A stretch of DNA of 64,000 nucleotides from Octopus sinensis (taxonomy: Eukaryota), in the NCBI RefSeq assembly GCF_006345805.1, contig NC_043025.1, forward strand, positions 14,322,001 to 14,386,000, given 5' to 3'. Shown here one piece after another: positions 6,044-42,000 of this stretch; position 1 is the first letter of the stretch, and each line of letters opens with the position of its first letter. The notes below the pieces were generated by a model. It was not told where the DNA came from. It ran no database searches and saw nothing but the letters and a program-made list of their open reading frames with translations. The position numbers and the translations under genes are program-made.

Positions 6044-7076
6044 GCCCAAACAACATTAAAATAATCAAAATGAAAAGTATTCTTATTGTCTTTGTTTTTA
6101 ATTATATTTTAATATACGTATAATTAATAATATTATACACGTCTGTGTGCGTGTATACATTTTATGCGTTTCCACATTTTTAGTTTTATTAAATGGCAAA
6201 TTTATCCAGGCAGGTCACTGCTGCATTACTGATCCCTAGAGATGCCCCCTTCTAGGAGAAAAAAATCGATAAAACTGAACGGACCACCCACTTTTAGCAA
6301 AGTTACACCAAATTGGTGTCAAGTACGGAATAAGGGAAATAACTGCTGAATTCTACCGTCATCTTCGCGAATTATCTCCCCTTTTTCCACACTCGCTGCT
6401 GCAAAGGAAATGGACTGTGGCCATACTGGAGCACTACATTCAATATTTAGTCGATTAGATGGACAGTAGTATTATGTCTGGTGTTTCTCTTCTCGGCAGT
6501 GGATCGGTAGAATAGTCAGTAGGTCAACTGGTTGGAATCCTGGTTCAAATTGTATCGATTTTAGATTTACCTTTTATTTGTTCTGGGGTGGATTTAATAT
6601 TCCTATAAAATATTCTGGATGTGAAGGGATTTATAATAGAAGACTAAGGCAACCTAGAGCAGGGATCGGCAAACCGGGGTAAATTATCCCAAGTGGGGTA
6701 AAAATGAAATTCTTGGGAACAGCAGTAGGGGTTCCTTGGCTATTTTTGCCTTTCATCCTTTCGGGGTCGATAAATTAAGTACCAGTTATGCACTGGGGTC
6801 GATGTAATCGACTTAATCCATTTGTCCTTGTTTGTCCCCTCTGTGTTTAGCCCCTTGTGGGTAGTAAAGAAATATATTTTTAGAAATGATGCCAAAAACC
6901 ATTTTTCAAAGTTTATTTTTAGAAATGATGACAGCAGAACTTTTTGGAGATTTTCTGTGTTTTAGTTATAGGGATAAGATTTTTAAACCCCAAATAAGAT
7001 TAATTTAACCATTGTTTGTTTAAGCTTGGGTTTGAATTTCTTAATAAAATCCTTTTCTTTCAATTTCAATCAGGTT

Positions 7077-7335: not shown

Positions 7336-9380
7336 CCGATATATATATATATATAAATATGCCGGTGGAACATAAAAAGCACCATCCGAACATGGCCAAT
7401 GCCAGCACCACCTTGACTGGCTTCCGTGCTGGTGGCACGTTAAAAGCACCAACTGATTGTGGCCGATGCCGGTGGCACGTAAAAAGCATCCACTACACTC
7501 GCAGAGTGGTTGGCATTATGAAGGGCATCCAGCTGTAGAAACACTGCCAGATCAGACTGGAGCCTGGTGCAGCCTCCTGGCTTCCCAGACCCCGGTCGAA
7601 CCGTCCAACTCATGCTAGCACGGAGAACGGACGTTAAACGATGATGATGATGACGATGTGTGTGTGTGTGTGTGTGTATGTAGGCATAGGAGTGGCTGTG
7701 TACATCGCTTGACAACTGATGCTGGTGTGTTTACATCCCCATAGCTTAGCGATTCAGCAAAAGAATCCGATAGAATAAGTATTAGGCTTACAAAGAATAA
7801 GTCCAGGAGTAGGGGGGGAATCAATTTGTTCGACTAAAGGCAGTGCTCCAGCATGGCCGCAATCAAACGACTGAAACAAATAAAAGAACAAAAGACTACA
7901 TATATTCACACACACACACACACGTATGTGTTTGTGTATCAAGAGAGAAAGGAACAAAAAAACAAAGTAAAAACACAAAGTTTTATGTCAGAAGATTTCA
8001 GATTTTTCGCTTGAATTGAAGAGTCAAGAGTCATGAAATGTTTTAACAAAAATATAGCATTATACATACATGCATGTTATGTGAGTGTGTGTATATACCG
8101 TATTTTAACGTGTATAAGGAACCCCTTAAATTTGGGGGCTTAAAATTTGAAACAAAAAAAAGGTTTTGTAAGGGATTATAATATTATCCATGTATAAGAA
8201 ACTCCCATTTTTTTTTACCTAATTTTTGATAAATAAGGGTTCCTTAGACACATTAAAATACAGTATATATAAGTATGTATGTTTGTATTATGTGTGTGTT
8301 TATATATATATATATACACACACATATATATGTATGTATGTATGCATGTTTGTATTATGTGTGTTTATATGTATATATACACACACATATAAATATATAT
8401 GTATGCATTTTGTATGAATGTGTGTGTATGTATATGTATATATACACACAAATATATATATGTAGGTATGTATATTTATATATACATGTATCTTTATATA
8501 TACATATATATACACATTTATATACAAATATATATGTATGTATGCATGCATGTTTGTATTATGTATGTGTGTGTTTATATGTATATATATACACACACAT
8601 GTATGCATGGTTGTATGAATGTGTGTGTATATATACTCACAAATATATAGGTGTGTGTGTGTTTTGTGTGTAGGTATGTATATTTATATATACATGTATC
8701 TTGTATTTACAAAAATATAATTATATAAATAATATACATTGAAATAATGAGTTCTTATTTCCGGTTTCATTGTATTAAATGAGAAAGAGTGCTGGAAATA
8801 GCAGCCAAATCTCCCTCGAATGACATGGCCTGTACCACCACTTTCTAAGAAAATAGCATGTTGGATGTTGGATATGACTGCGAGTTCTTTGTACATAGGA
8901 AAACAGACGTGATGGTCATAGGTGGAATGTCTTCTTTGGTGGCAACTCTGCTGGATGATGCCTGACCTGGGGGCTAAACAACATTTGTATACAATGCACG
9001 AACACAATTTCATACACATATATACACACCAAGATATACATACATACACAACATATAATATACATTTATATACATATATATATGAGAGAGAGAGAGATAA
9101 ATAGATATACATGCACACACATATAGCCACATATCCATACACACATCCACAACATGCGTATGTATGTATGAATATTTTTTTTTTTACTTGTTTCAGTCAT
9201 TTGACTACAGCCATGCTGGAGCACCGCATTTAGTCGAGCAACTCGACCCCGGGACTTATTCTGTTGTAAGCCCAGTACTTATTCTATCGGTCTCTTTTGC
9301 CGAATCGCTAAGTGACAGGGACGTAAACACACCAGCATCGGTTGTCAAGCAATGCTAGGGGGACAAACACAGACACACAA

Positions 9381-9622: not shown

Positions 9623-9904
9623 ATAAATACAGACAGCACAAGACGTTCATTGAGATTACTTTGGGGACAAAGTCTCTTAGTTTACAGTAACTGATAACAT
9701 TAAGCAGAGCATAGAACAATTAGCGTTTAAGATCCAGTAATTTTGATAACAATAACAACCATTTGATAACATTATCCCTCACCAGAAGAAGCAGCTTTCA
9801 CTGTGTACATACCAGCATAAATTACATACACACACACACATATATATATACACATATATACATACATATTAAGAGACAGACACACAGTCACACGTGTCCA
9901 CTGG

Positions 9905-10429
9905 TCAATGGGATTTGATACAAACGTAGATGCCGACATGTATAATAGTGTTCTTGTCCTTGTCAAACGACACCTCGTATGTCCACCTGTCGCCCTTCTT
10001 CTCCGCCAGTAAGCAATGCACATAGTCCATGGTCCTGTAAACCAAAAGATATCTGGGTTTGTCAGCCGAACAGTTCAACCATTTTACGGCCTTCATGTGG
10101 CCCTCACATTCGTAGAGGCGGACGCACTTGTTGTCCAGGAATTGCTCAGCCGTACCCGACGGGTAGTTGTCGACCACATCGAACAGAGAATAGACATCGC
10201 AGAGGGCCAGGCCGAACCACTTACCGTAGCATTCGTAGAAGACCCTCATCGTTGTGGTGGGTAAAGTGCTCCAGAACCGCTCCTCCTGTTCGGAACTTTC
10301 GATTTTCTCCCGTATCCGGCTGATGTTCCGTAGGATACTCCTCAGGGGAACATTCAGGTGGAGCAGCCGTCTGTAGCGGCGGAAATTCTTGTAAAACTGC
10401 CTCAGTTGGCGAGAATAAGATAGGGACAT
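9905..10429 (-). CDS. Unidentified intronless ORF2, 174 aa (MSLSYSRQLRQFYKNF...GIYVCIKSH)
   Basis: Non-repetitive globular-looking sequence with visibly G/C-rich third codon positions in an AT-rich window. ATG has A at -3 and starts 2 nt after the ORF1 stop. I recognise no family. Confidence 0.7.
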   Translation of the reverse strand: MSLSYSRQLRQFYKNFRRYRRLLHLNVPLRSILRNISRIREKIESSEQEERFWSTLPTTTMRVFYECYGKWFGLALCDVYSLFDVVDNYPSGTAEQFLDNKCVRLYECEGHMKAVKWLNCSADKPRYLLVYRTMDYVHCLLAEKKGDRWTYEVSFDKDKNTIIHVGIYVCIKSH

Positions 10430-10431
10430 GT

Positions 10432-11700
10432 TCAGATCAAACAGGCGTTGGAGGTAGTGTTGGTGTTGGTTGTGGTGGTTGCGGAGGTGGCTTCGGTGGC
10501 TGTGGCCGTAGTATGGATCTTTCGACCAGGGAACAGCAATTCCAGGTAATAACCCTGCTGGAAGGCACAGGACAGCCTCACCATCGGAGATTCCCTCTCT
10601 TTGATTCTCAAATACTTCAATTTCTCAAAGTTGTTGGGACACGAATGTAGGATCTCGAAGGAAGATGTTGGCGCCACACACAAATGCTTCCTCAGGTTAT
10701 CCAAAGACACCTCCAAATGTTGTTTCGTTTCTGGTACATCTATGTTCCGCTGTAGCCTTGCCTTGATCTTGCCCCGGATGCCGGATGAACAAACCATTCG
10801 GCTTTTACCGAGCTGACTCCCTAACTCGCTCCTCAATATATTCAGAGGGTCCCCATCCAGCTCAAGATCCTTCTCACACTCACCGCCCTCCATCGCCGCT
10901 CCATTCGACGGGATGCCACTCTCTGCCATGTCTAAGTCCACCTCGTATTTCTCGTTCTGCGATGGAGTCGTGTCCCAAATATTATACTTGGACTCACCCA
11001 GGAAACGTCCTTCGGGATTTCCTTGTTGTGGAATAGAAACATCAAATCGCTGATCCGGCATCGGATAACATCCGTGGGAAGCAACCGAATGCTCCTGGTG
11101 TTGTTGCTGTTGTTGTTGGTGGTGGTTCTCTTCTGCTTCCTCCTCCATCTCATCTTTATAATCCGTGCTGACCGTCCCTTCACATTTGGGCCTGTCTCTG
11201 TGAGACGTGTCAAAGGTCAGAGCGGCCGAACCGGGGTCAGCGGACGAGTCCAGCTGCAGATAATTAAAGGAGTCGCACGTCGACCGTTTCCTTTCTGAAG
11301 TGGTGGTCGCATTTATGTTGATGTTGTTGATGCTGTTGTTGCTGGAGGCGGTGGTGTCGGAGGTGGTGGCCACCATCATCGCCGCCGCCGCCGCCGTCGT
11401 CGTCGCCTGTTCCGTGTAAGTCAAACCTTGACCTTCGACCTCGATCAACTTCGACGCCGACGGTTTCGCCATCAACAGCCTCAAAGGTCGGTATTTCTCG
11501 TCGAAGTAGCGCAGGGCGAATTCGATCTCTCTTCCCCTCGATTCGCCGCAGACCCTCTCCTCCCCCTCCATCTCCCCCTCCTCCTCGGTCGATCTCCACA
11601 TTTCGGACAAATAGGCGTTGGTCGTGATTCCGGCCTCGAACACCTCCGACCACATCTGCCTGACCACTTCGATGTTCTGGCCAAACGGATGGACGCCCAT
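10432..11700 (-). CDS. Unidentified intronless ORF1, 422 aa (MGVHPFGQNIEVVRQ...NACLI)
   Basis: 1269-nt open frame with GC3 bias up to the stop and a good Kozak context (agcATGG). Two ordered-looking blocks are separated by Thr/Ala/Asn/Gln/His/Glu low-complexity linkers. I recognise no family. Confidence 0.75.
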   Translation of the reverse strand: MGVHPFGQNIEVVRQMWSEVFEAGITTNAYLSEMWRSTEEEGEMEGEERVCGESRGREIEFALRYFDEKYRPLRLLMAKPSASKLIEVEGQGLTYTEQATTTAAAAAMMVATTSDTTASSNNSINNININATTTSERKRSTCDSFNYLQLDSSADPGSAALTFDTSHRDRPKCEGTVSTDYKDEMEEEAEENHHQQQQQQHQEHSVASHGCYPMPDQRFDVSIPQQGNPEGRFLGESKYNIWDTTPSQNEKYEVDLDMAESGIPSNGAAMEGGECEKDLELDGDPLNILRSELGSQLGKSRMVCSSGIRGKIKARLQRNIDVPETKQHLEVSLDNLRKHLCVAPTSSFEILHSCPNNFEKLKYLRIKERESPMVRLSCAFQQGYYLELLFPGRKIHTTATATEATSATTTTNTNTTSNACLI

Positions 11701-11739: not shown

Positions 11740-11935
11740 CGTCGGTTTCTTTGTAATCCAAGCGTCAGGAGTTCGATTCCTGCACGAGTCAGCAGAACGG
11801 GGAACAGCTTTTACGTAACACCGTCATTGTCAGCGTCACCTAGCGGCGGTGACGATGGCAAACCTTTCCCCTCTCGACTTCTGTTCCGTCGAGTTTCACT
11901 TCGGAACAAAAAGCGATGTTATTACTTCCTGGATA
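11740..11935 (-). promoter_or_regulatory. CpG-rich promoter/5' leader of the ORF1-ORF2 locus
   Basis: CpG-dense island with TTACGTAA (11811-11818), four CGTCA/TGACG half-sites, ETS-like ACTTCCTG (11924-11931) and a 12-aa uORF (11827-11789). Confidence 0.45.
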
Positions 11936-11940
11936 CACTA

Positions 11941-12281
11941 AACACACACACACACACGCACACACACATACACACGCACACACACACACACACAGACGCA
12001 CACACAGACACGCGCGCACATACACACACACACGCACACACACATACACACACGCACACATACACACACACACATACGCGCGCACATACACACACACACG
12101 CACACACACACATACACACACGCACACATACACACACACACATACGCGCGCACATACACACTCACACATACACACACATACACACACGCACACACACACA
12201 CACGCGCGCACATACACACACATACACACTCACACACAGACGCACACACACGCGCGCACATACACACACACACACACACAC
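11941..12281. repeat. Compound (CA)n/(CG)/(TA) microsatellite
   Basis: About 340 bp of CA-dominated dinucleotide repeat. Confidence 0.95.
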
Positions 12282-12864
12282 TTTTTAACGGAACAACGTT
12301 GAACGTTAGAATAATGACTGTAAAACGACATTTTATAGATTTCTCCAACACAAGAACGACTGATGGAGTTTTTATTGGCAGCATGTGTTATGATCGGAGA
12401 CATTCCGACTGTGACCATCCTGTCTTATATTCAGGCATAGTGTATCTAGGACTACATTATCTAATGTGTCCTGCCTTGTTGTTTAGCCCCAGGTCAGTCC
12501 TGATCCAGTAGGCCTATGATCAAAGATGTTCCACCTGTGACCATCCCGTCTTTTTTTCAGGCATAGTGTATGTAGGACTACATTATCTAATGTGTCCTTT
12601 GCTGCTATTGCTTTTTAGCCCCAGGTCAGCCCTGATCCAGCAGACATTTGATAAAAAATGCACAAGAGCCTGTGTGTGTGTGTGTTTGCTTCACAACCAA
12701 CGTTGTGGGAAGGAAGAATTTGATTGATGACTTTGTAGAAAATACTCTAGCAAGTCAGGAACCGAGGGAACTGACTTGTTGTATTGACAATCCAGAGTGG
12801 CCTCCACAGCTGGCTGCTCTGGTACTGGAAAGAAGGGAATTTTTCTACTTAACAGACTCCTTTT

Positions 12865-16333: not shown

Positions 16334-17739
16334 ATATGCAAGTGATTATTTGGCAAAATATAGATATAGGTGCAAGAGTGGCTGTGTGGTAAGTAGCTTG
16401 CTTACCAACCATATGGTTCTGGGTTCAGTCCCACTGCGTGGCACCTTGGGCAAGTGTCTTCTACTATAGCCTCGGGATGACCAAAGCCTTGTGAATGGAT
16501 TTGGTAGACGGAAACTGAAAGAAGCCCATCGTATATATATGTATGTGTGTGTATATGTTTGTGTATCTGTGTTTGTCCCCCACTCAACATCGCTTGATAA
16601 CTGATGCTGGTGTGCTTACGTCCCAGTAACTTAGCAGTCCAGCAAAAGAGACCGATAGAATAAGTAATAGACTTACAAAAGAATAAGTCCTGGGGTCGAT
16701 TTGCTCAACTATAAAGACGGTGCTCCAGCATGGCTGCAGTCAAATGACTGAAACTAGTAAAAGAGTAAAAGAGAGAGAGTAAAGAGTAAAAGAGTATATA
16801 TATATATGGGTAAGGTGTTGCTGCTGATGAATGTGGCTTGTAACAATCTAACGAACTAATATTAATTAAACAACAAAATATCAGAGAATTATTTTTTTTT
16901 TTAGAAGTAATGAAAACAATACAAGAGACGAAATGTGTTTTGTTGCTGGGTTAGGTTTTAATATTTAATCATATCAACAGAGAACATTTGTGTTTAAACA
17001 GTCCACATCATTCAAATAACTGAAATAAAGAAAGAAAGAAAGAAAAAGAAAGAAAAAGAGAAAAAGGGAAGAAGCATAACAATATATAAGCAAAGATATT
17101 CGTTAACACCTCGAAATAAGATTCGTCAAGATTTGATTGGCTGCAAAAATAAATAAATAAATAAATAAATAATAAATAAAAAACCAAAAAATAAAAATAA
17201 AAAAACTACATTGTCATTTGCTTATATATTGTGTCACTATTTCTCTTTGACTGTTTGTTTCTATGGTAACAAGGAATTCAGAGTAACAATCCAAGAAGCA
17301 GGCGCTTCGTATCGTAGTCGTTATGGGTACAAATTCTGTCTTTTTTTTATAACGAGGAATTGTTTCTTTGTTTGTAACAAAAAAACAAAAGTTGATCTTG
17401 TTTACGGTGGTTTTTATCAATTCAACAACCGGTTTATGAAAAGATATTTCTTTCGGGTTTTTGGGTAAGAAAGTCCCCCGACAAGGGTGAGAAGCCATTT
17501 ATTGTTAAGGGACTATGAAGAAAGAGATATTAAGATGAAAGGAATGGATTTACTTTGGACTTGAAAGAGTTCAGGTCAGAAGGATGGAAGTGATGGAGAA
17601 CAACGAACAAACACAGGAAAAAAGAAACATCTTAAAATAGACAAAAAGATGAAGACAGAGACAGCTTCTTAGAATGCTAAACAGGGAAGTTAAGTGACCT
17701 TTATATATTTCAGGCGAGAGGATATGTCATTAGAAGTGA

Positions 17740-39000: not shown

Positions 39001-42000
39001 AGCAAGCATGGAAAGAAAGTGGACAAATGATGATGATGATGATGATGATGACTATGATGGTGATAGGAAATGTGTGTGAAGAAGACCCTGCAGAGGCTGA
39101 CCCCAACTGGACGCTACTTACCATCATCAAATATAACCAACAACGGTGCCACAAGATCACACATCCCTTGAACATAACCGATTTCAAGATGCTCCCAAAC
39201 ATACCTGAAAATAGAAGGAATTATAAAGGGTTTAGGTATTACAAGATGAAACCCGCAGTACTTAGGACTGGACAGGTACTTCCACTGATGTGATGGTCAG
39301 TACTAATAACTATCTTTATCTTTTTTATACACTTTTACTTGTTTCAGTTATTTGACTGCGGCCATGCTGGAGCACCGCCTTTAGTCGAGCAAATTGACCC
39401 CGGGACTTATTCTTTGGAAGCCGAGTACTTATTCTATCGGTCTCTTTGGCCGAACCGCTAAGTGACAGCGACGTAAACACACCAGCATCGGTTGTCAAGC
39501 AATGCCAGAGGGACAAATACAGACACACACACACACACACATATATATACACATATATACGATGGGCTTCTTTCAGTTTCCGTCTACCAAATCCACTCAC
39601 AAGGCTTTGGTCGGCCCGAGACTATAGTAGAAGACACTTGCCCAAGGTGCCACGCAGTGGGACTGAACCCGGAACCATGTGGTTGGTTAGCAAGCTACTT
39701 ACCACACAGCCACTCCTGTGCCTATAGGTGCATTAACTTCACTACCATGCACGACTGTATCACCAATGTATACCATATTTTCTGGCATAAAGTTGAATTT
39801 TCAGATGAAAATTTATAGTGTAGGAGTGGCTGTATGGTAAATAGCTTGCTTACCAACCACAACACACAGCCCGGTCTGGGAATCGAACTCACTACCTCAC
39901 GATTGTGAGCCTGATGCCCTAACCATTGAGCCATGCACCTTCACACCATTTAAGCATATGCCTCTCTCCTTCTCTTTCATACACACACACACACACACAC
40001 CTGGGTCCAACTCCAACGTCTGGCAGCTGACTTGGCAGACACCCATAAAATAATCAACCATCGTACAAAGAATAACTCTGAGCACCTTTTCAAACTCCAC
40101 CTGTCTAACACCCGTGGACATGTTTACAAAGTCAGAAAACAGCACAGCTCCTTCCATGACTTTAGGAAACATTTTTTCATGCTAAGAGTTGCTGAAGCAT
40201 GGAACAAACTGCCGGCATCAGTTGTTGGTTGTCGGAGCACTGCATCCTTCAAAACCTCCATGCTTTCTGAGATTCGCCAACACTACACCTGAGCTTTCTC
40301 CCCTCCATACACACGCTGAAGCATGGAACAAACTGCCGGCATCAGTTGTTAGTTGTCGGAGCAATGCATCCTTCAAAACTTCCATGCTTTCTGAGATTCG
40401 CCAACACTACACTTGATTTTCTCCCCTCCATACACACGCTGAAGCATGGAACAAACTGCCGGCATCAGTTGTTGGTTGTTGGAGCACTGCATCCTTCAAA
40501 ACTTCCATGCTTCCTGAGATTCGCCAACACTACACCTGATTTTCTCCCCTCCATACACACGCTGAAGCATGGAACAAACTGCCGGCATCAGTTGTTGGTT
40601 GTTGGAGCACTGCATCCTTCAAAACTTCCATGCTTCCTGAGATTCGCCAACACTACACCTGATTTCCTCCCTTCCATACACACACAAGCATGTATCTGAC
40701 TCATACATTGTTCGCTTTCCAGACATTTCTACACTACTCTACATATACTCTGACAAGTTGTGGGGCACCTGAGCACTGTATACAATAATTTCATTATTAT
40801 TATTATTATTTTTTAAAGAAACGAACGAGTCCCCTTACGTGCACATAATGTTCCTTAACTTGTCGAGGTTTGCGGGGGTGAAATACCAGTAATTTCGGTC
40901 ACACCTCTGCACGTCCTTATCGATGCGGTGAAGGTTAAGAGCAACATTATCGAGGAGTTCAGGCTAAAAGAGAAATAAGAATACTCTGTAGCGAAACATG
41001 ACGTGTATGAGGGGTGGGGGATATTGTTGAGGGGTGGAGTGTAGGAGAGTATGAAGGTATGTGAGTGTGGGTAGTGTGAGCAGGTAAGGTAGAGTGTGGG
41101 CAATTGAGTGAGAGTGTGGGCAATTGAGTGAGTGTGTGTGTAGTTGAGTGACAGTGTGGGCAATTGAGTGAGGGTGTGTGTAGTTGAGTGAGTGTGTGTG
41201 TAGTTGAGTGAGTGTGTGGTCAATTGAGTGAGAGTGTGGGCAGTTGAGTGACATGTGGGCAATTGAGAGAGAGTGTGGGCAATTGAGTGAGTGTGTGGGT
41301 AATTGAGTGAGAGTGTGGGCAATTGAGTGAGAGTGTGGGCAATTGAGTGAGAGTGTGGGCAGTTGAGTGACATGTGGGCAATTGAGAGAGAGTGTGGGCA
41401 ATTGAGTGAGTGTGTGGGTAATTGAGTGAGTGTGTGGGCAATTGAGTGAGAGTGTGGGCAATTGAGTGAGAGTGTGGGCAATTGAGTGAATGTATGGGTA
41501 GTTGAGCTGATTGCAAAGCAGACTTCTTGCCATACACCTAAGGTATGTAAATATTTTCTTAACTGAATTAATAAGAAACAAACAAAAAAAAACCATTTAA
41601 CATGCATGCAATTACACAATCAATGAAATCTGAGAAATTAATGTCCAGGAAGATTTTAATTGAATTATTAATAAGACATAATTAGATTTTGTTGTGTCTT
41701 GGGAGAATCTCATTAACACACGCACTGGTTCATTTCCATCATCATCATCATCATCATCGTTTAACGTCCGCTTTCCATGCTGGCATGGGTTAGATGGTTT
41801 GGATGAGGTCTGGAGAGCCAGTGGCTGCACCAGGCTCCAATCTGATCTGGCAAGGTTTCTACAGCTGGATGCCCTTCCTAATGCCAACCACTCCGAGAGT
41901 GTAGCAGGGGCTTTTTATATGCCACCAACACAAGAGCCAGTTGGCGGGCCTGGCATTGATCACATTTAGAAAGTGTTTTTTATGTGCCACCGGCATGGGG

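What the first reader, a model, noticed from the sequence alone, without database searches (positions are those of the whole stretch)
9905..11700. Orphan intronless stop-start ORF pair (422 aa + 174 aa; TGA-AC-ATG): dicistronic gene, viral relic or 1-nt indel
Seen in sequence: two GC3-biased, intronless ORFs sit 2 nt apart in a region where neighbouring genes have many introns. ORF2's frame (-1 relative to ORF1) is open for 65 codons upstream of its ATG (10624-10430). I found no XXXYYYZ slippery heptamer and no UGGGA TURBS motif near the junction. Adding one T to the TTT at 10439-10441 fuses the ORFs into one 598-aa protein (...NACFDLNMSLSY...). A NAGNAG acceptor (cttccag/cag, 10559/10556) inside ORF1 and a perfect donor (CG|GTAAGT at 10225) inside ORF2 offer splicing routes. 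I recognise neither protein. Inference: a termination-reinitiation dicistronic unit, an endogenised viral or transposon cassette, or a single gene with an assembly error or null allele.
Basis: partly seen in the sequence, partly recalled or inferred. Interest (0 to 1): 0.75.

Follow-up and report, generated by a model that had tools for sequence, protein, structure and literature searches.

The report
One octopus gene split by frameshift
The two adjacent reading frames are the two halves of one ordinary intronless octopus gene that is uninterrupted in three related octopuses; here one single-base frameshift splits it, so it is not a two-protein (dicistronic) unit.

Summary
On the minus strand, ORFs of 422 aa (10432-11700) and 174 aa (9905-10429) lie 2 nt apart. 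They are GC3-rich and have no recoding signals. They are not orphans: O. vulgaris (99% identical, collinear locus), O. bimaculoides and a third octopod encode both parts as one continuous protein of 583-613 aa. Against O. vulgaris the coding span differs by 12 substitutions and exactly one 1-nt length difference, which lies in a length-variable Thr/Asn low-complexity tract. A conserved domain found in distant relatives runs across the ORF1/ORF2 boundary. The ORF2 part is under strong purifying selection (omega about 0.05). The stop-start juxtaposition is therefore a by-product of one frameshift. I cannot tell from sequence whether this is an assembly or polishing error or a young, possibly heterozygous, null allele. 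Dicistronic reinitiation is not supported.

A side result: the gene belongs to an undescribed family with no Pfam or PDB relative. Members occur in cephalopods, in a unionid mussel (three tandem copies), and as the end gene of a multi-copy virus-like element that carries an A32-type packaging ATPase, a dNK and a fibre-like protein. No other gene of that element is present in the window.

The parts
9905..11700 (-). One intronless protein-coding gene of about 598 codons, orthologous to the O. vulgaris hypothetical protein P0001 and to O. bimaculoides A0A0L8HGS4. In this window one frameshift breaks it, so it reads as a 422-aa ORF followed by a 174-aa ORF.
11407..11700 (-). N-terminal conserved block of about 98 aa. 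It is found only in cephalopod sequences (matches P0005 and P0007).
9905..10710 (-). Conserved C-terminal family domain. It has a helical part with the SLxxL, KLKYL and AFQQGYY motifs, then a variable Thr/Asn low-complexity linker, then an alpha/beta part. It runs across the ORF1/ORF2 boundary.
11885..12340 (.). (CA/TG)n-rich microsatellite block just upstream of the gene. It is a neighbour, not part of the gene.
9816..9901 (.). (CA)n/(TA)n microsatellite just downstream of the stop codon. There is no poly(A) remnant.

Best explanation
The two ORFs are the two halves of one intronless gene of about 598 codons. It is conserved as a single ORF in other Octopus species. In this window, one single-base length difference shifts the frame. 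It lies inside a length-variable low-complexity (Thr/Asn-coding, ACC/AAC-type) tract near the end of ORF1. ORF1 then runs into an out-of-frame TGA. The ATG two bases later is simply a conserved internal Met codon of the full-length protein. Nothing suggests a mechanism that couples translation of the two ORFs. The frameshift is either a residual assembly or polishing error (my estimate about 60%) or a very recent, possibly heterozygous, null allele (about 35%). The intact protein has a cephalopod-specific N-terminal part and a C-terminal domain of about 270 aa from an undescribed family. In family members outside mollusc genomes, that domain carries a Cys-His-Asp arrangement on a papain-like-looking scaffold. 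The octopus copies lack the Cys, so by inference they would act as non-catalytic binding proteins. Shown here: orthologue continuity, a single frameshift, selection, and a domain spanning the boundary. Inferred: the cause of the frameshift, the fold class and the function.
For:: P0001 (O. vulgaris), P0002 (O. bimaculoides) and P0003 (Logan SRR11869394) each contain the ORF1 and ORF2 sequence in one protein of 583-613 aa; the O. vulgaris ORF also extends to the same upstream ATG.

over the coding span the window and O. vulgaris differ by 12 substitutions and one 1-nt gap. Against the third octopod, all gaps but one are multiples of 3.

read in ORF2's frame, the residues just upstream of the ATG are those of the orthologues.

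the locus is collinear with O. vulgaris over 21.7 kb. The 5.4-kb block around the gene has 39 gap openings, and only one is in the 1.8-kb CDS. From the flank rate 18.8 would be expected (Poisson P about 1e-7).

ORF2 versus O. vulgaris shows 6 synonymous and 0 non-synonymous differences (P about 9e-5 under neutrality). Omega is 0.048 for ORF2 and 0.28 for ORF1 against the third octopod.

in distant relatives such as P0006 (E 6e-11, profile positions 349-557), one contiguous domain covers both sides of the boundary.

no slippery heptamer and no TGGGA.
Against: No reads, transcripts or peptides from the source animal were available, so a real split gene in this lineage cannot be excluded. Only about 5 substitutions in ORF2 can be polarised (2 on the window's lineage, both synonymous), so selection after the frameshift cannot be measured. 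In another cephalopod (L008/L009) the homologous locus is disrupted several times, yet an ORF2-equivalent stays open and starts at the same Met directly after a stop. That shows the gene can be lost. It also leaves a small chance that the ORF2 part works alone.
Confidence: 0.9

Rival explanations
1. The frameshift is real. The source lineage or individual carries a null allele or a very young pseudogene. ORF1 would give a truncated protein lacking the C-terminal half of the conserved domain, and ORF2 would not be translated.
For: The tract holding the frameshift varies in length between species through in-frame gaps. That makes it slippage-prone in vivo as well as in assembly. The gene can be lost: a more distant cephalopod carries a multiply disrupted copy.
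Against: The gene is strongly constrained in Octopus (omega 0.05-0.28). Only one indel occurs in the CDS against about 19 expected from the flanks. The window lineage has no non-synonymous change in ORF2. These facts are also compatible with a very recent event, so this rival is not excluded.
Confidence: 0.33
2. It is a true dicistronic unit. Ribosomes terminate at ORF1's TGA and reinitiate at the ATG 2 nt downstream, or shift frame, and so make two proteins.
For: The stop and start lie 2 nt apart. ORF2 begins at a Met that is invariant in the three orthologues. A second cephalopod has an open ORF2-equivalent directly after a stop.
Against: The arrangement is absent from all three orthologues. 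There is no UGGGA-type motif and no slippery heptamer. The split would cut a single conserved domain in two. The residues upstream of the ATG in ORF2's frame still match the orthologues, as expected from a recent frameshift and not from an evolved junction.
Confidence: 0.03
3. It is a recently endogenised viral or transposon cassette, and the ORF pair is a relic of a mobile element's gene pair.
For: The gene is intronless and GC3-rich in an AT-rich, repeat-rich region. Family members P0013 and P0024 are the end gene of a multi-copy virus-like array with an A32-type ATPase, a dNK and a fibre-like protein.
Against: A tblastn of every protein of that array against the window hits only this gene. 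The flanking direct and inverted repeats are dispersed SINE-like copies, 13-24 per window, and not element ends. The locus is syntenic with O. vulgaris, and the gene is under purifying selection across octopods. No family member was found in IMG/VR. An ancient exchange between a virus and molluscs, in either direction, remains possible (my estimate 0.3-0.4), but it would not explain the ORF split.
Confidence: 0.05

Closest known systems
Annotated hypothetical proteins of Octopus vulgaris (P0001; GCA_951406725.2, OX597843.1) and Octopus bimaculoides (UniProt A0A0L8HGS4)
   Same: This is the same gene. P0001 is 99% identical over ORF1 (79% for O. bimaculoides) and identical over all 174 aa of ORF2. 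The O. vulgaris locus is collinear, and the gene is intronless.
   Different: In those species the reading frame is continuous. Here one frameshift splits it.
Termination-reinitiation (TURBS-dependent stop-start coupling of some RNA viruses) and programmed -1 frameshifting
   Same: The stop and start codons lie within a few nucleotides of each other, and the second ORF is in the -1 frame.
   Different: There is no upstream 18S-complementary motif and no slippery heptamer. The arrangement is not conserved in orthologues.
Papain-like cysteine peptidase fold of the Josephin type (weak Foldseek matches: ubiquitin clippase BpJOS 9f5t; YopQ 8brf)
   Same: In the AlphaFold model of family member P0014, an invariant Cys sits at the N-terminus of a helix, an invariant His at the start of a beta-strand, and an Asp follows the next strand.
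   Different: The matches are not significant (E 0.04-0.4, TM 0.24-0.5), and there is no Pfam or PDB sequence hit. The octopus proteins have Val or Ala in place of the Cys, the more distant cephalopod fragment P0004 has Ile, and the mussel proteins have Gln in place of Cys and Asn in place of His.
Host genes shared with endogenous large DNA virus-like or Maverick/Polinton-like elements
   Same: Relatives sit in a dense, intronless array next to an A32-type packaging ATPase. The array occurs at least twice, with different flanks, in one assembly.
   Different: No capsid, polymerase or integrase gene was identified in the stretches I could read. The element type is unknown, and the octopus locus has only the single gene.

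Membership tests
Termination-reinitiation dicistron (TURBS type) | Stop of ORF1 and start of ORF2 overlap or lie within a few nucleotides | tested here: met
   TGA-AC-ATG
Termination-reinitiation dicistron (TURBS type) | 18S-complementary motif (UGGGA core) within about 100 nt upstream of the junction | tested here: not met
   No TGGGA in the last 150 nt of ORF1
Termination-reinitiation dicistron (TURBS type) | Two-ORF arrangement conserved in relatives | tested here: not met
   Three orthologues have one continuous ORF
Programmed -1 ribosomal frameshift | Slippery X_XXY_YYZ heptamer in the overlap of the two frames | tested here: not met
   None in frame, and none in any frame, in the 195-nt zone where both frames are open
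Orthologue of the Octopus hypothetical protein (A0A0L8HGS4 / P0001) | Collinear locus and high identity over both parts | tested here: met
   99.3% nucleotide identity over the CDS. The locus is collinear with OX597843.1 over 21.7 kb
Orthologue of the Octopus hypothetical protein (A0A0L8HGS4 / P0001) | One uninterrupted reading frame | tested here: not met
   One frameshift relative to the orthologues. Whether it is real or an artefact cannot be tested here
Orthologue of the Octopus hypothetical protein (A0A0L8HGS4 / P0001) | Purifying selection on both parts | tested here: met
   Omega 0.28 (ORF1) and 0.048 (ORF2) against the third octopod. 6 synonymous and 0 non-synonymous differences in ORF2 against O. 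vulgaris
Papain-like (Josephin-type) cysteine peptidase | Significant structural or sequence match to the fold | tested here: inconclusive
   Foldseek best E 0.038 (8brf) and 0.36 (9f5t). No Pfam hit and no PDB sequence hit
Papain-like (Josephin-type) cysteine peptidase | Nucleophile Cys with His and Asp/Asn partners | tested here: not met
   The octopus proteins have Val or Ala at the Cys column (Ile in the cephalopod fragment P0004), with His and Asp kept. Eight of the nine members from metagenome or unplaced assemblies show Cys, His and Asp; the ninth, the fragment P0011, covers only the Cys column, where it has Cys
Endogenous viral element / Maverick-Polinton-like cassette at this locus | Hallmark viral genes (packaging ATPase, capsid, polymerase or integrase) next to the gene | tested here: not met
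   A tblastn of all array proteins of L003 and L006 against the window hits only this gene
Endogenous viral element / Maverick-Polinton-like cassette at this locus | Terminal repeats or an insertion boundary around the gene | tested here: not met
   The flanking repeats are dispersed, 13-24 copies in 64 kb. The flanks are collinear with O. vulgaris
Endogenous viral element / Maverick-Polinton-like cassette at this locus | Relatives of the gene encoded in viral genomes | tested here: inconclusive
   Relatives lie in a virus-like array in two ENA contigs. None was found in IMG/VR, JGI metagenomes or BFVD structures
Processed retrogene | Intronless copy with a poly(A) remnant and an intron-bearing parent gene | tested here: not met
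   The gene is intronless, but no poly(A) tract follows the stop. All family members seen are intronless, and no parent gene was found

The most novel reading that the evidence does not exclude
The gene family would be a virus-linked, papain-like domain that molluscs acquired from, or donated to, an undescribed large DNA virus-like element and kept as a catalytically dead protein. In addition, the C-terminal ORF2 part would be able to work alone, translated from its conserved Met. That would explain why an open ORF2-equivalent directly after a stop is seen in two cephalopod lineages.
Probability: 0.07. Interest if true: 0.6.

Novelty: already known. Interest (0 to 1): 0.22.

Why it matters
For the scan, this is a caution: a striking stop-start ORF pair in a eukaryotic assembly can come from a single-base frameshift in a low-complexity coding tract, and one orthologue comparison resolves it. 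For annotation, the locus should be treated as one gene, either low-quality or a null allele. The side result is of modest biological interest. An uncharacterised, intronless mollusc gene family with no Pfam or PDB relative is shared with a multi-copy virus-like element and appears to have lost its putative catalytic Cys in the mollusc genome copies.

Tried and rejected
- ORF2 alone in the word-indexed protein search found nothing, although the orthologues contain it. This is a limit of the index, not evidence of absence.
- Exact look-ups of the 422-aa and 174-aa products found no record. No read-derived assembly could therefore be used to test the tract.
- P0002 has no DNA on record.
- The first AlphaFold run, on the full-length octopus protein with 3 sequences, was useless (pLDDT 28.5). 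The second, on P0014 with 14 sequences, gave pLDDT 77.9.
- Pfam on the ORFs and on nine family members gave nothing above cut-off.
- A profile search of PDB sequences gave nothing.
- Foldseek against BFVD gave nothing.
- Scans of IMG/VR and JGI metagenomes found no relatives.
- Pfam, PHROGs and PDB searches on the neighbours in the virus-like array identified only the A32-type ATPase, the dNK and a fibre-like protein. I rejected the capsid idea for the 492-aa protein for lack of any hit.
Both sites lie in conserved codons and are in the wrong order.
- Literature searches found nothing on this protein.
- I did not build a joined ORF1+ORF2 product. I used the natural orthologues instead.

Full report
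**1. Observation.**
The minus strand carries an ATG-to-TGA ORF of 422 aa at 10432..11700 and, 2 nt further on, an ORF of 174 aa at 9905..10429. GC3 is 0.66 and 0.69, against 0.39 GC in the rest of the window. The other long ORFs of the window run through microsatellites or tandem repeats.

ORF2's frame is open for 65 codons upstream of its ATG. The zone where both frames are open has no X_XXY_YYZ heptamer, and the last 150 nt of ORF1 have no TGGGA.

The splice-site-like strings are also present. They lie inside codons of family-wide conserved motifs, and the 'acceptor' precedes the 'donor' in the transcript. They are chance matches.

**2. The ORFs are not orphans, and they are one gene.**
A search with ORF1 returned three proteins:
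- P0001, Octopus vulgaris, 583 aa, 99% identical.
- P0002, O. bimaculoides A0A0L8HGS4, 593 aa, 79% identical.
- P0003, from a Logan assembly of SRR11869394, 613 aa, 72% identical.

Each contains the ORF1 sequence and the ORF2 sequence in one uninterrupted protein. The O. vulgaris frame also reaches the same upstream ATG as the window, so the 583-aa annotation merely starts at a later Met.

I aligned the window with the O. vulgaris locus (L002) and the Logan contig (L001). Over the coding span, the window and O. vulgaris differ by 12 substitutions and exactly one gap of 1 nt. Against the third octopod, every gap but one is a multiple of 3.

The frame change lies in the Thr/Asn-coding low-complexity tract that ends ORF1. 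This tract also varies in length between species by in-frame steps. I built no joined sequence and used the natural orthologues for all searches.

Read in ORF2's frame, the residues just before its ATG are those of the orthologues. The ATG is therefore an internal Met codon, and the TGA is an out-of-frame triplet.

**3. Orthology and selection.**
The window is collinear with O. vulgaris OX597843.1 over the whole 21.7 kb fetched, at 84-98% identity. The source is therefore a close relative of O. vulgaris. My guess, from general knowledge and not tested, is O. sinensis.

In the 5.4-kb block around the gene there are 39 gap openings, and only one falls in the 1.8-kb CDS. The flank rate predicts 18.8 (Poisson P about 1e-7).

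ORF2 differs from O. vulgaris by 6 synonymous and 0 non-synonymous changes (P about 9e-5 under neutrality). Against the third octopod, omega is 0.048 for ORF2 and 0.28 for ORF1.

Polarising with the outgroup leaves only 2 derived changes in ORF2 on the window's lineage, both synonymous. That is too few to say whether constraint continued after the frameshift.

**4. A domain crosses the boundary.**
A profile of the three orthologues was searched against 1.8 billion representative proteins. It found 12 further proteins:
- two fragments matching the N-terminal 78 residues (P0005, P0007; other cephalopods);
- one close C-terminal fragment (P0004);
- nine proteins of 203-394 aa matching the C-terminal region (E from 6e-11 to 9e-4).

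In these relatives the motifs that lie in the window's ORF1 (SLxEL, KLKLLY, AFHQGYY) and those that lie in ORF2 (the RxLQLY..LGxYRxLL helix, FW, the CF..CY.WF helix, LDxxDN, RYLLxY, GHC) are contiguous in one protein, with only a short linker. The octopus proteins carry the Thr/Asn tract in that linker. Splitting the gene at the boundary would cut this domain in two.

**5. What the family is.**
No Pfam family reaches its cut-off for the ORFs or for nine members, and there is no PDB sequence relative.

AlphaFold on P0014 with a 14-sequence alignment gave mean pLDDT 77.9. The model has an N-terminal coiled coil, a helical bundle and a C-terminal alpha/beta part.

Foldseek found nothing significant:
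- Best PDB matches were YopQ (8brf, E 0.038, TM 0.24/0.50) and a Josephin-type ubiquitin clippase (9f5t, E 0.36).
- BFVD gave nothing.

In the model, an invariant Cys (P0014 C239) sits at the N-terminus of a helix, an invariant His (H321) at the start of a strand, and an Asp (D337) after the next strand. This is the layout of papain-like peptidases, but it is a lead and not a demonstration.

Eight of the nine members from metagenome or unplaced assemblies keep Cys, His and Asp; the ninth, the fragment P0011, covers only the Cys column and has Cys there. The cephalopod proteins have Val, Ala or Ile at the Cys column. The two mussel proteins have Gln at the Cys column and Asn at the His column. 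If the fold reading is right, the mollusc genome copies are non-catalytic.

**6. Where relatives live.**
*Mussel.* In Sinanodonta woodiana the family gene is intronless. It occurs three times in tandem, about 6 kb apart, within the span of a zinc-finger gene.

*ENA contigs.* P0013 and P0024 lie on two contigs of one ENA assembly (ERZ25070167). There they are the last gene of a dense, intronless array coded on both strands. The two copies share about 9.5 kb at 91-97% identity and then diverge into unrelated flanks, one of which holds a reverse-transcriptase element. The array includes:
- a Pox_A32-type packaging ATPase (30.3 bits, cut-off 22.8);
- a deoxynucleoside kinase (55 bits);
- a 350-aa fibre-like protein (PHROG tail-fibre families, E down to 1.8e-16, plus a weak ConA-like lectin match).

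This looks like a multi-copy integrated virus-like element of unknown type. In the L006 copy, the ATPase gene and the family gene each appear to be broken once.

*Other sources.* P0015 comes from TARA and other ENA marine metagenome scaffolds. No member was found in IMG/VR or JGI metagenomes.

**7. Is the octopus locus a viral cassette?**
No. A tblastn of all 24 array ORFs from L003 and L006 against the window, L002 and L007 hits nothing but the family gene. The direct and inverted repeats that flank the gene are copies of dispersed SINE-like repeats, present 13-24 times in the window. The locus is syntenic between species. An old exchange between such an element and molluscs is possible, but its direction is open.

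**8. Another cephalopod.**
Two identical Logan contigs (L008, L009; SRR8281686 and SRR8281672; about 47% protein identity to the octopus C-terminal region) carry the homologous locus. It has several frame changes and in-frame stops in the upstream part and a shortened C-terminus. Yet an open 159-codon ORF2-equivalent begins at the same Met, directly after a stop.

This shows the gene decays in some lineages. The open ORF2-equivalent could be chance (rough estimate P about 0.07 from the upstream disruption density). I note it as the only hint in favour of an independent ORF2.

**9. Verdict.**
This is one gene and one frameshift, with no evidence for coupled translation. Whether the frameshift is an assembly error or a real young allele cannot be decided without reads. 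I lean towards error, for three reasons:
- the gene is strongly constrained;
- the break is the only indel in the CDS;
- it sits in low-complexity sequence.

The finding as framed is ordinary. The undescribed family and its link to a virus-like element are a minor but real by-product.

Noticed in passing
L003:1-9575 and L006:2189-11730 (ENA ERZ25070167, contigs ctg369407 and ctg391100): Two copies, 91-97% identical, of a dense intronless gene array with different flanks. The array has an A32-type packaging ATPase, a deoxynucleoside kinase (seen in L006, just outside the shared stretch), a fibre-like protein with a weak ConA-like lectin match, and the family gene as its last gene. It looks like a multi-copy integrated virus-like element of unknown type. 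In the L006 copy the ATPase gene and the family gene each appear broken once.
   Followed up: partly
L007:4695-5423, 10061-10795, 16722-17516 (Sinanodonta woodiana CM100994.1): Three intronless paralogues of the family lie in tandem, about 6 kb apart, inside the span of a zf-C2H2 gene. They have Gln at the putative catalytic Cys column and Asn at the His column.
   Followed up: partly
L008:1-1799 and L009 (Logan SRR8281686 / SRR8281672): The homologous locus of a more distant cephalopod has several frame changes and stops upstream. It still keeps an open 159-codon ORF2-equivalent that starts at the same Met, directly after a stop codon.
   Followed up: partly
window:47236-48203 and 40191-40683: Two arrays of the same 123-nt tandem repeat (7.9 and 4.0 copies, 96-97% matches). 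The larger array creates a spurious 356-aa ORF.
   Followed up: no
window:41091-41493: A 20-nt tandem repeat (20 copies, higher-order period 119). It creates spurious ORFs of 210-254 aa on the minus strand.
   Followed up: no
window:9499-9574, 6745-6874, 7703-7793 and many other places: Three dispersed SINE-like repeat segments are each present 13-24 times in the 64 kb, in both orientations. Their translations recur in many of the listed ORFs, for example the [20 protein letters not shown] strings.
   Followed up: partly
window:52564-53394 (-): A 276-aa Ser/Asp-rich ORF that looks like a real coding exon of a neighbouring gene. Its C-terminal end runs into a SINE-like repeat.
   Followed up: no
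The word-indexed protein search found no hit for ORF2 alone, although P0001-P0003 contain it at 94-100% identity. The index evidently samples words unevenly, so its negative results are weak evidence.
   Followed up: no
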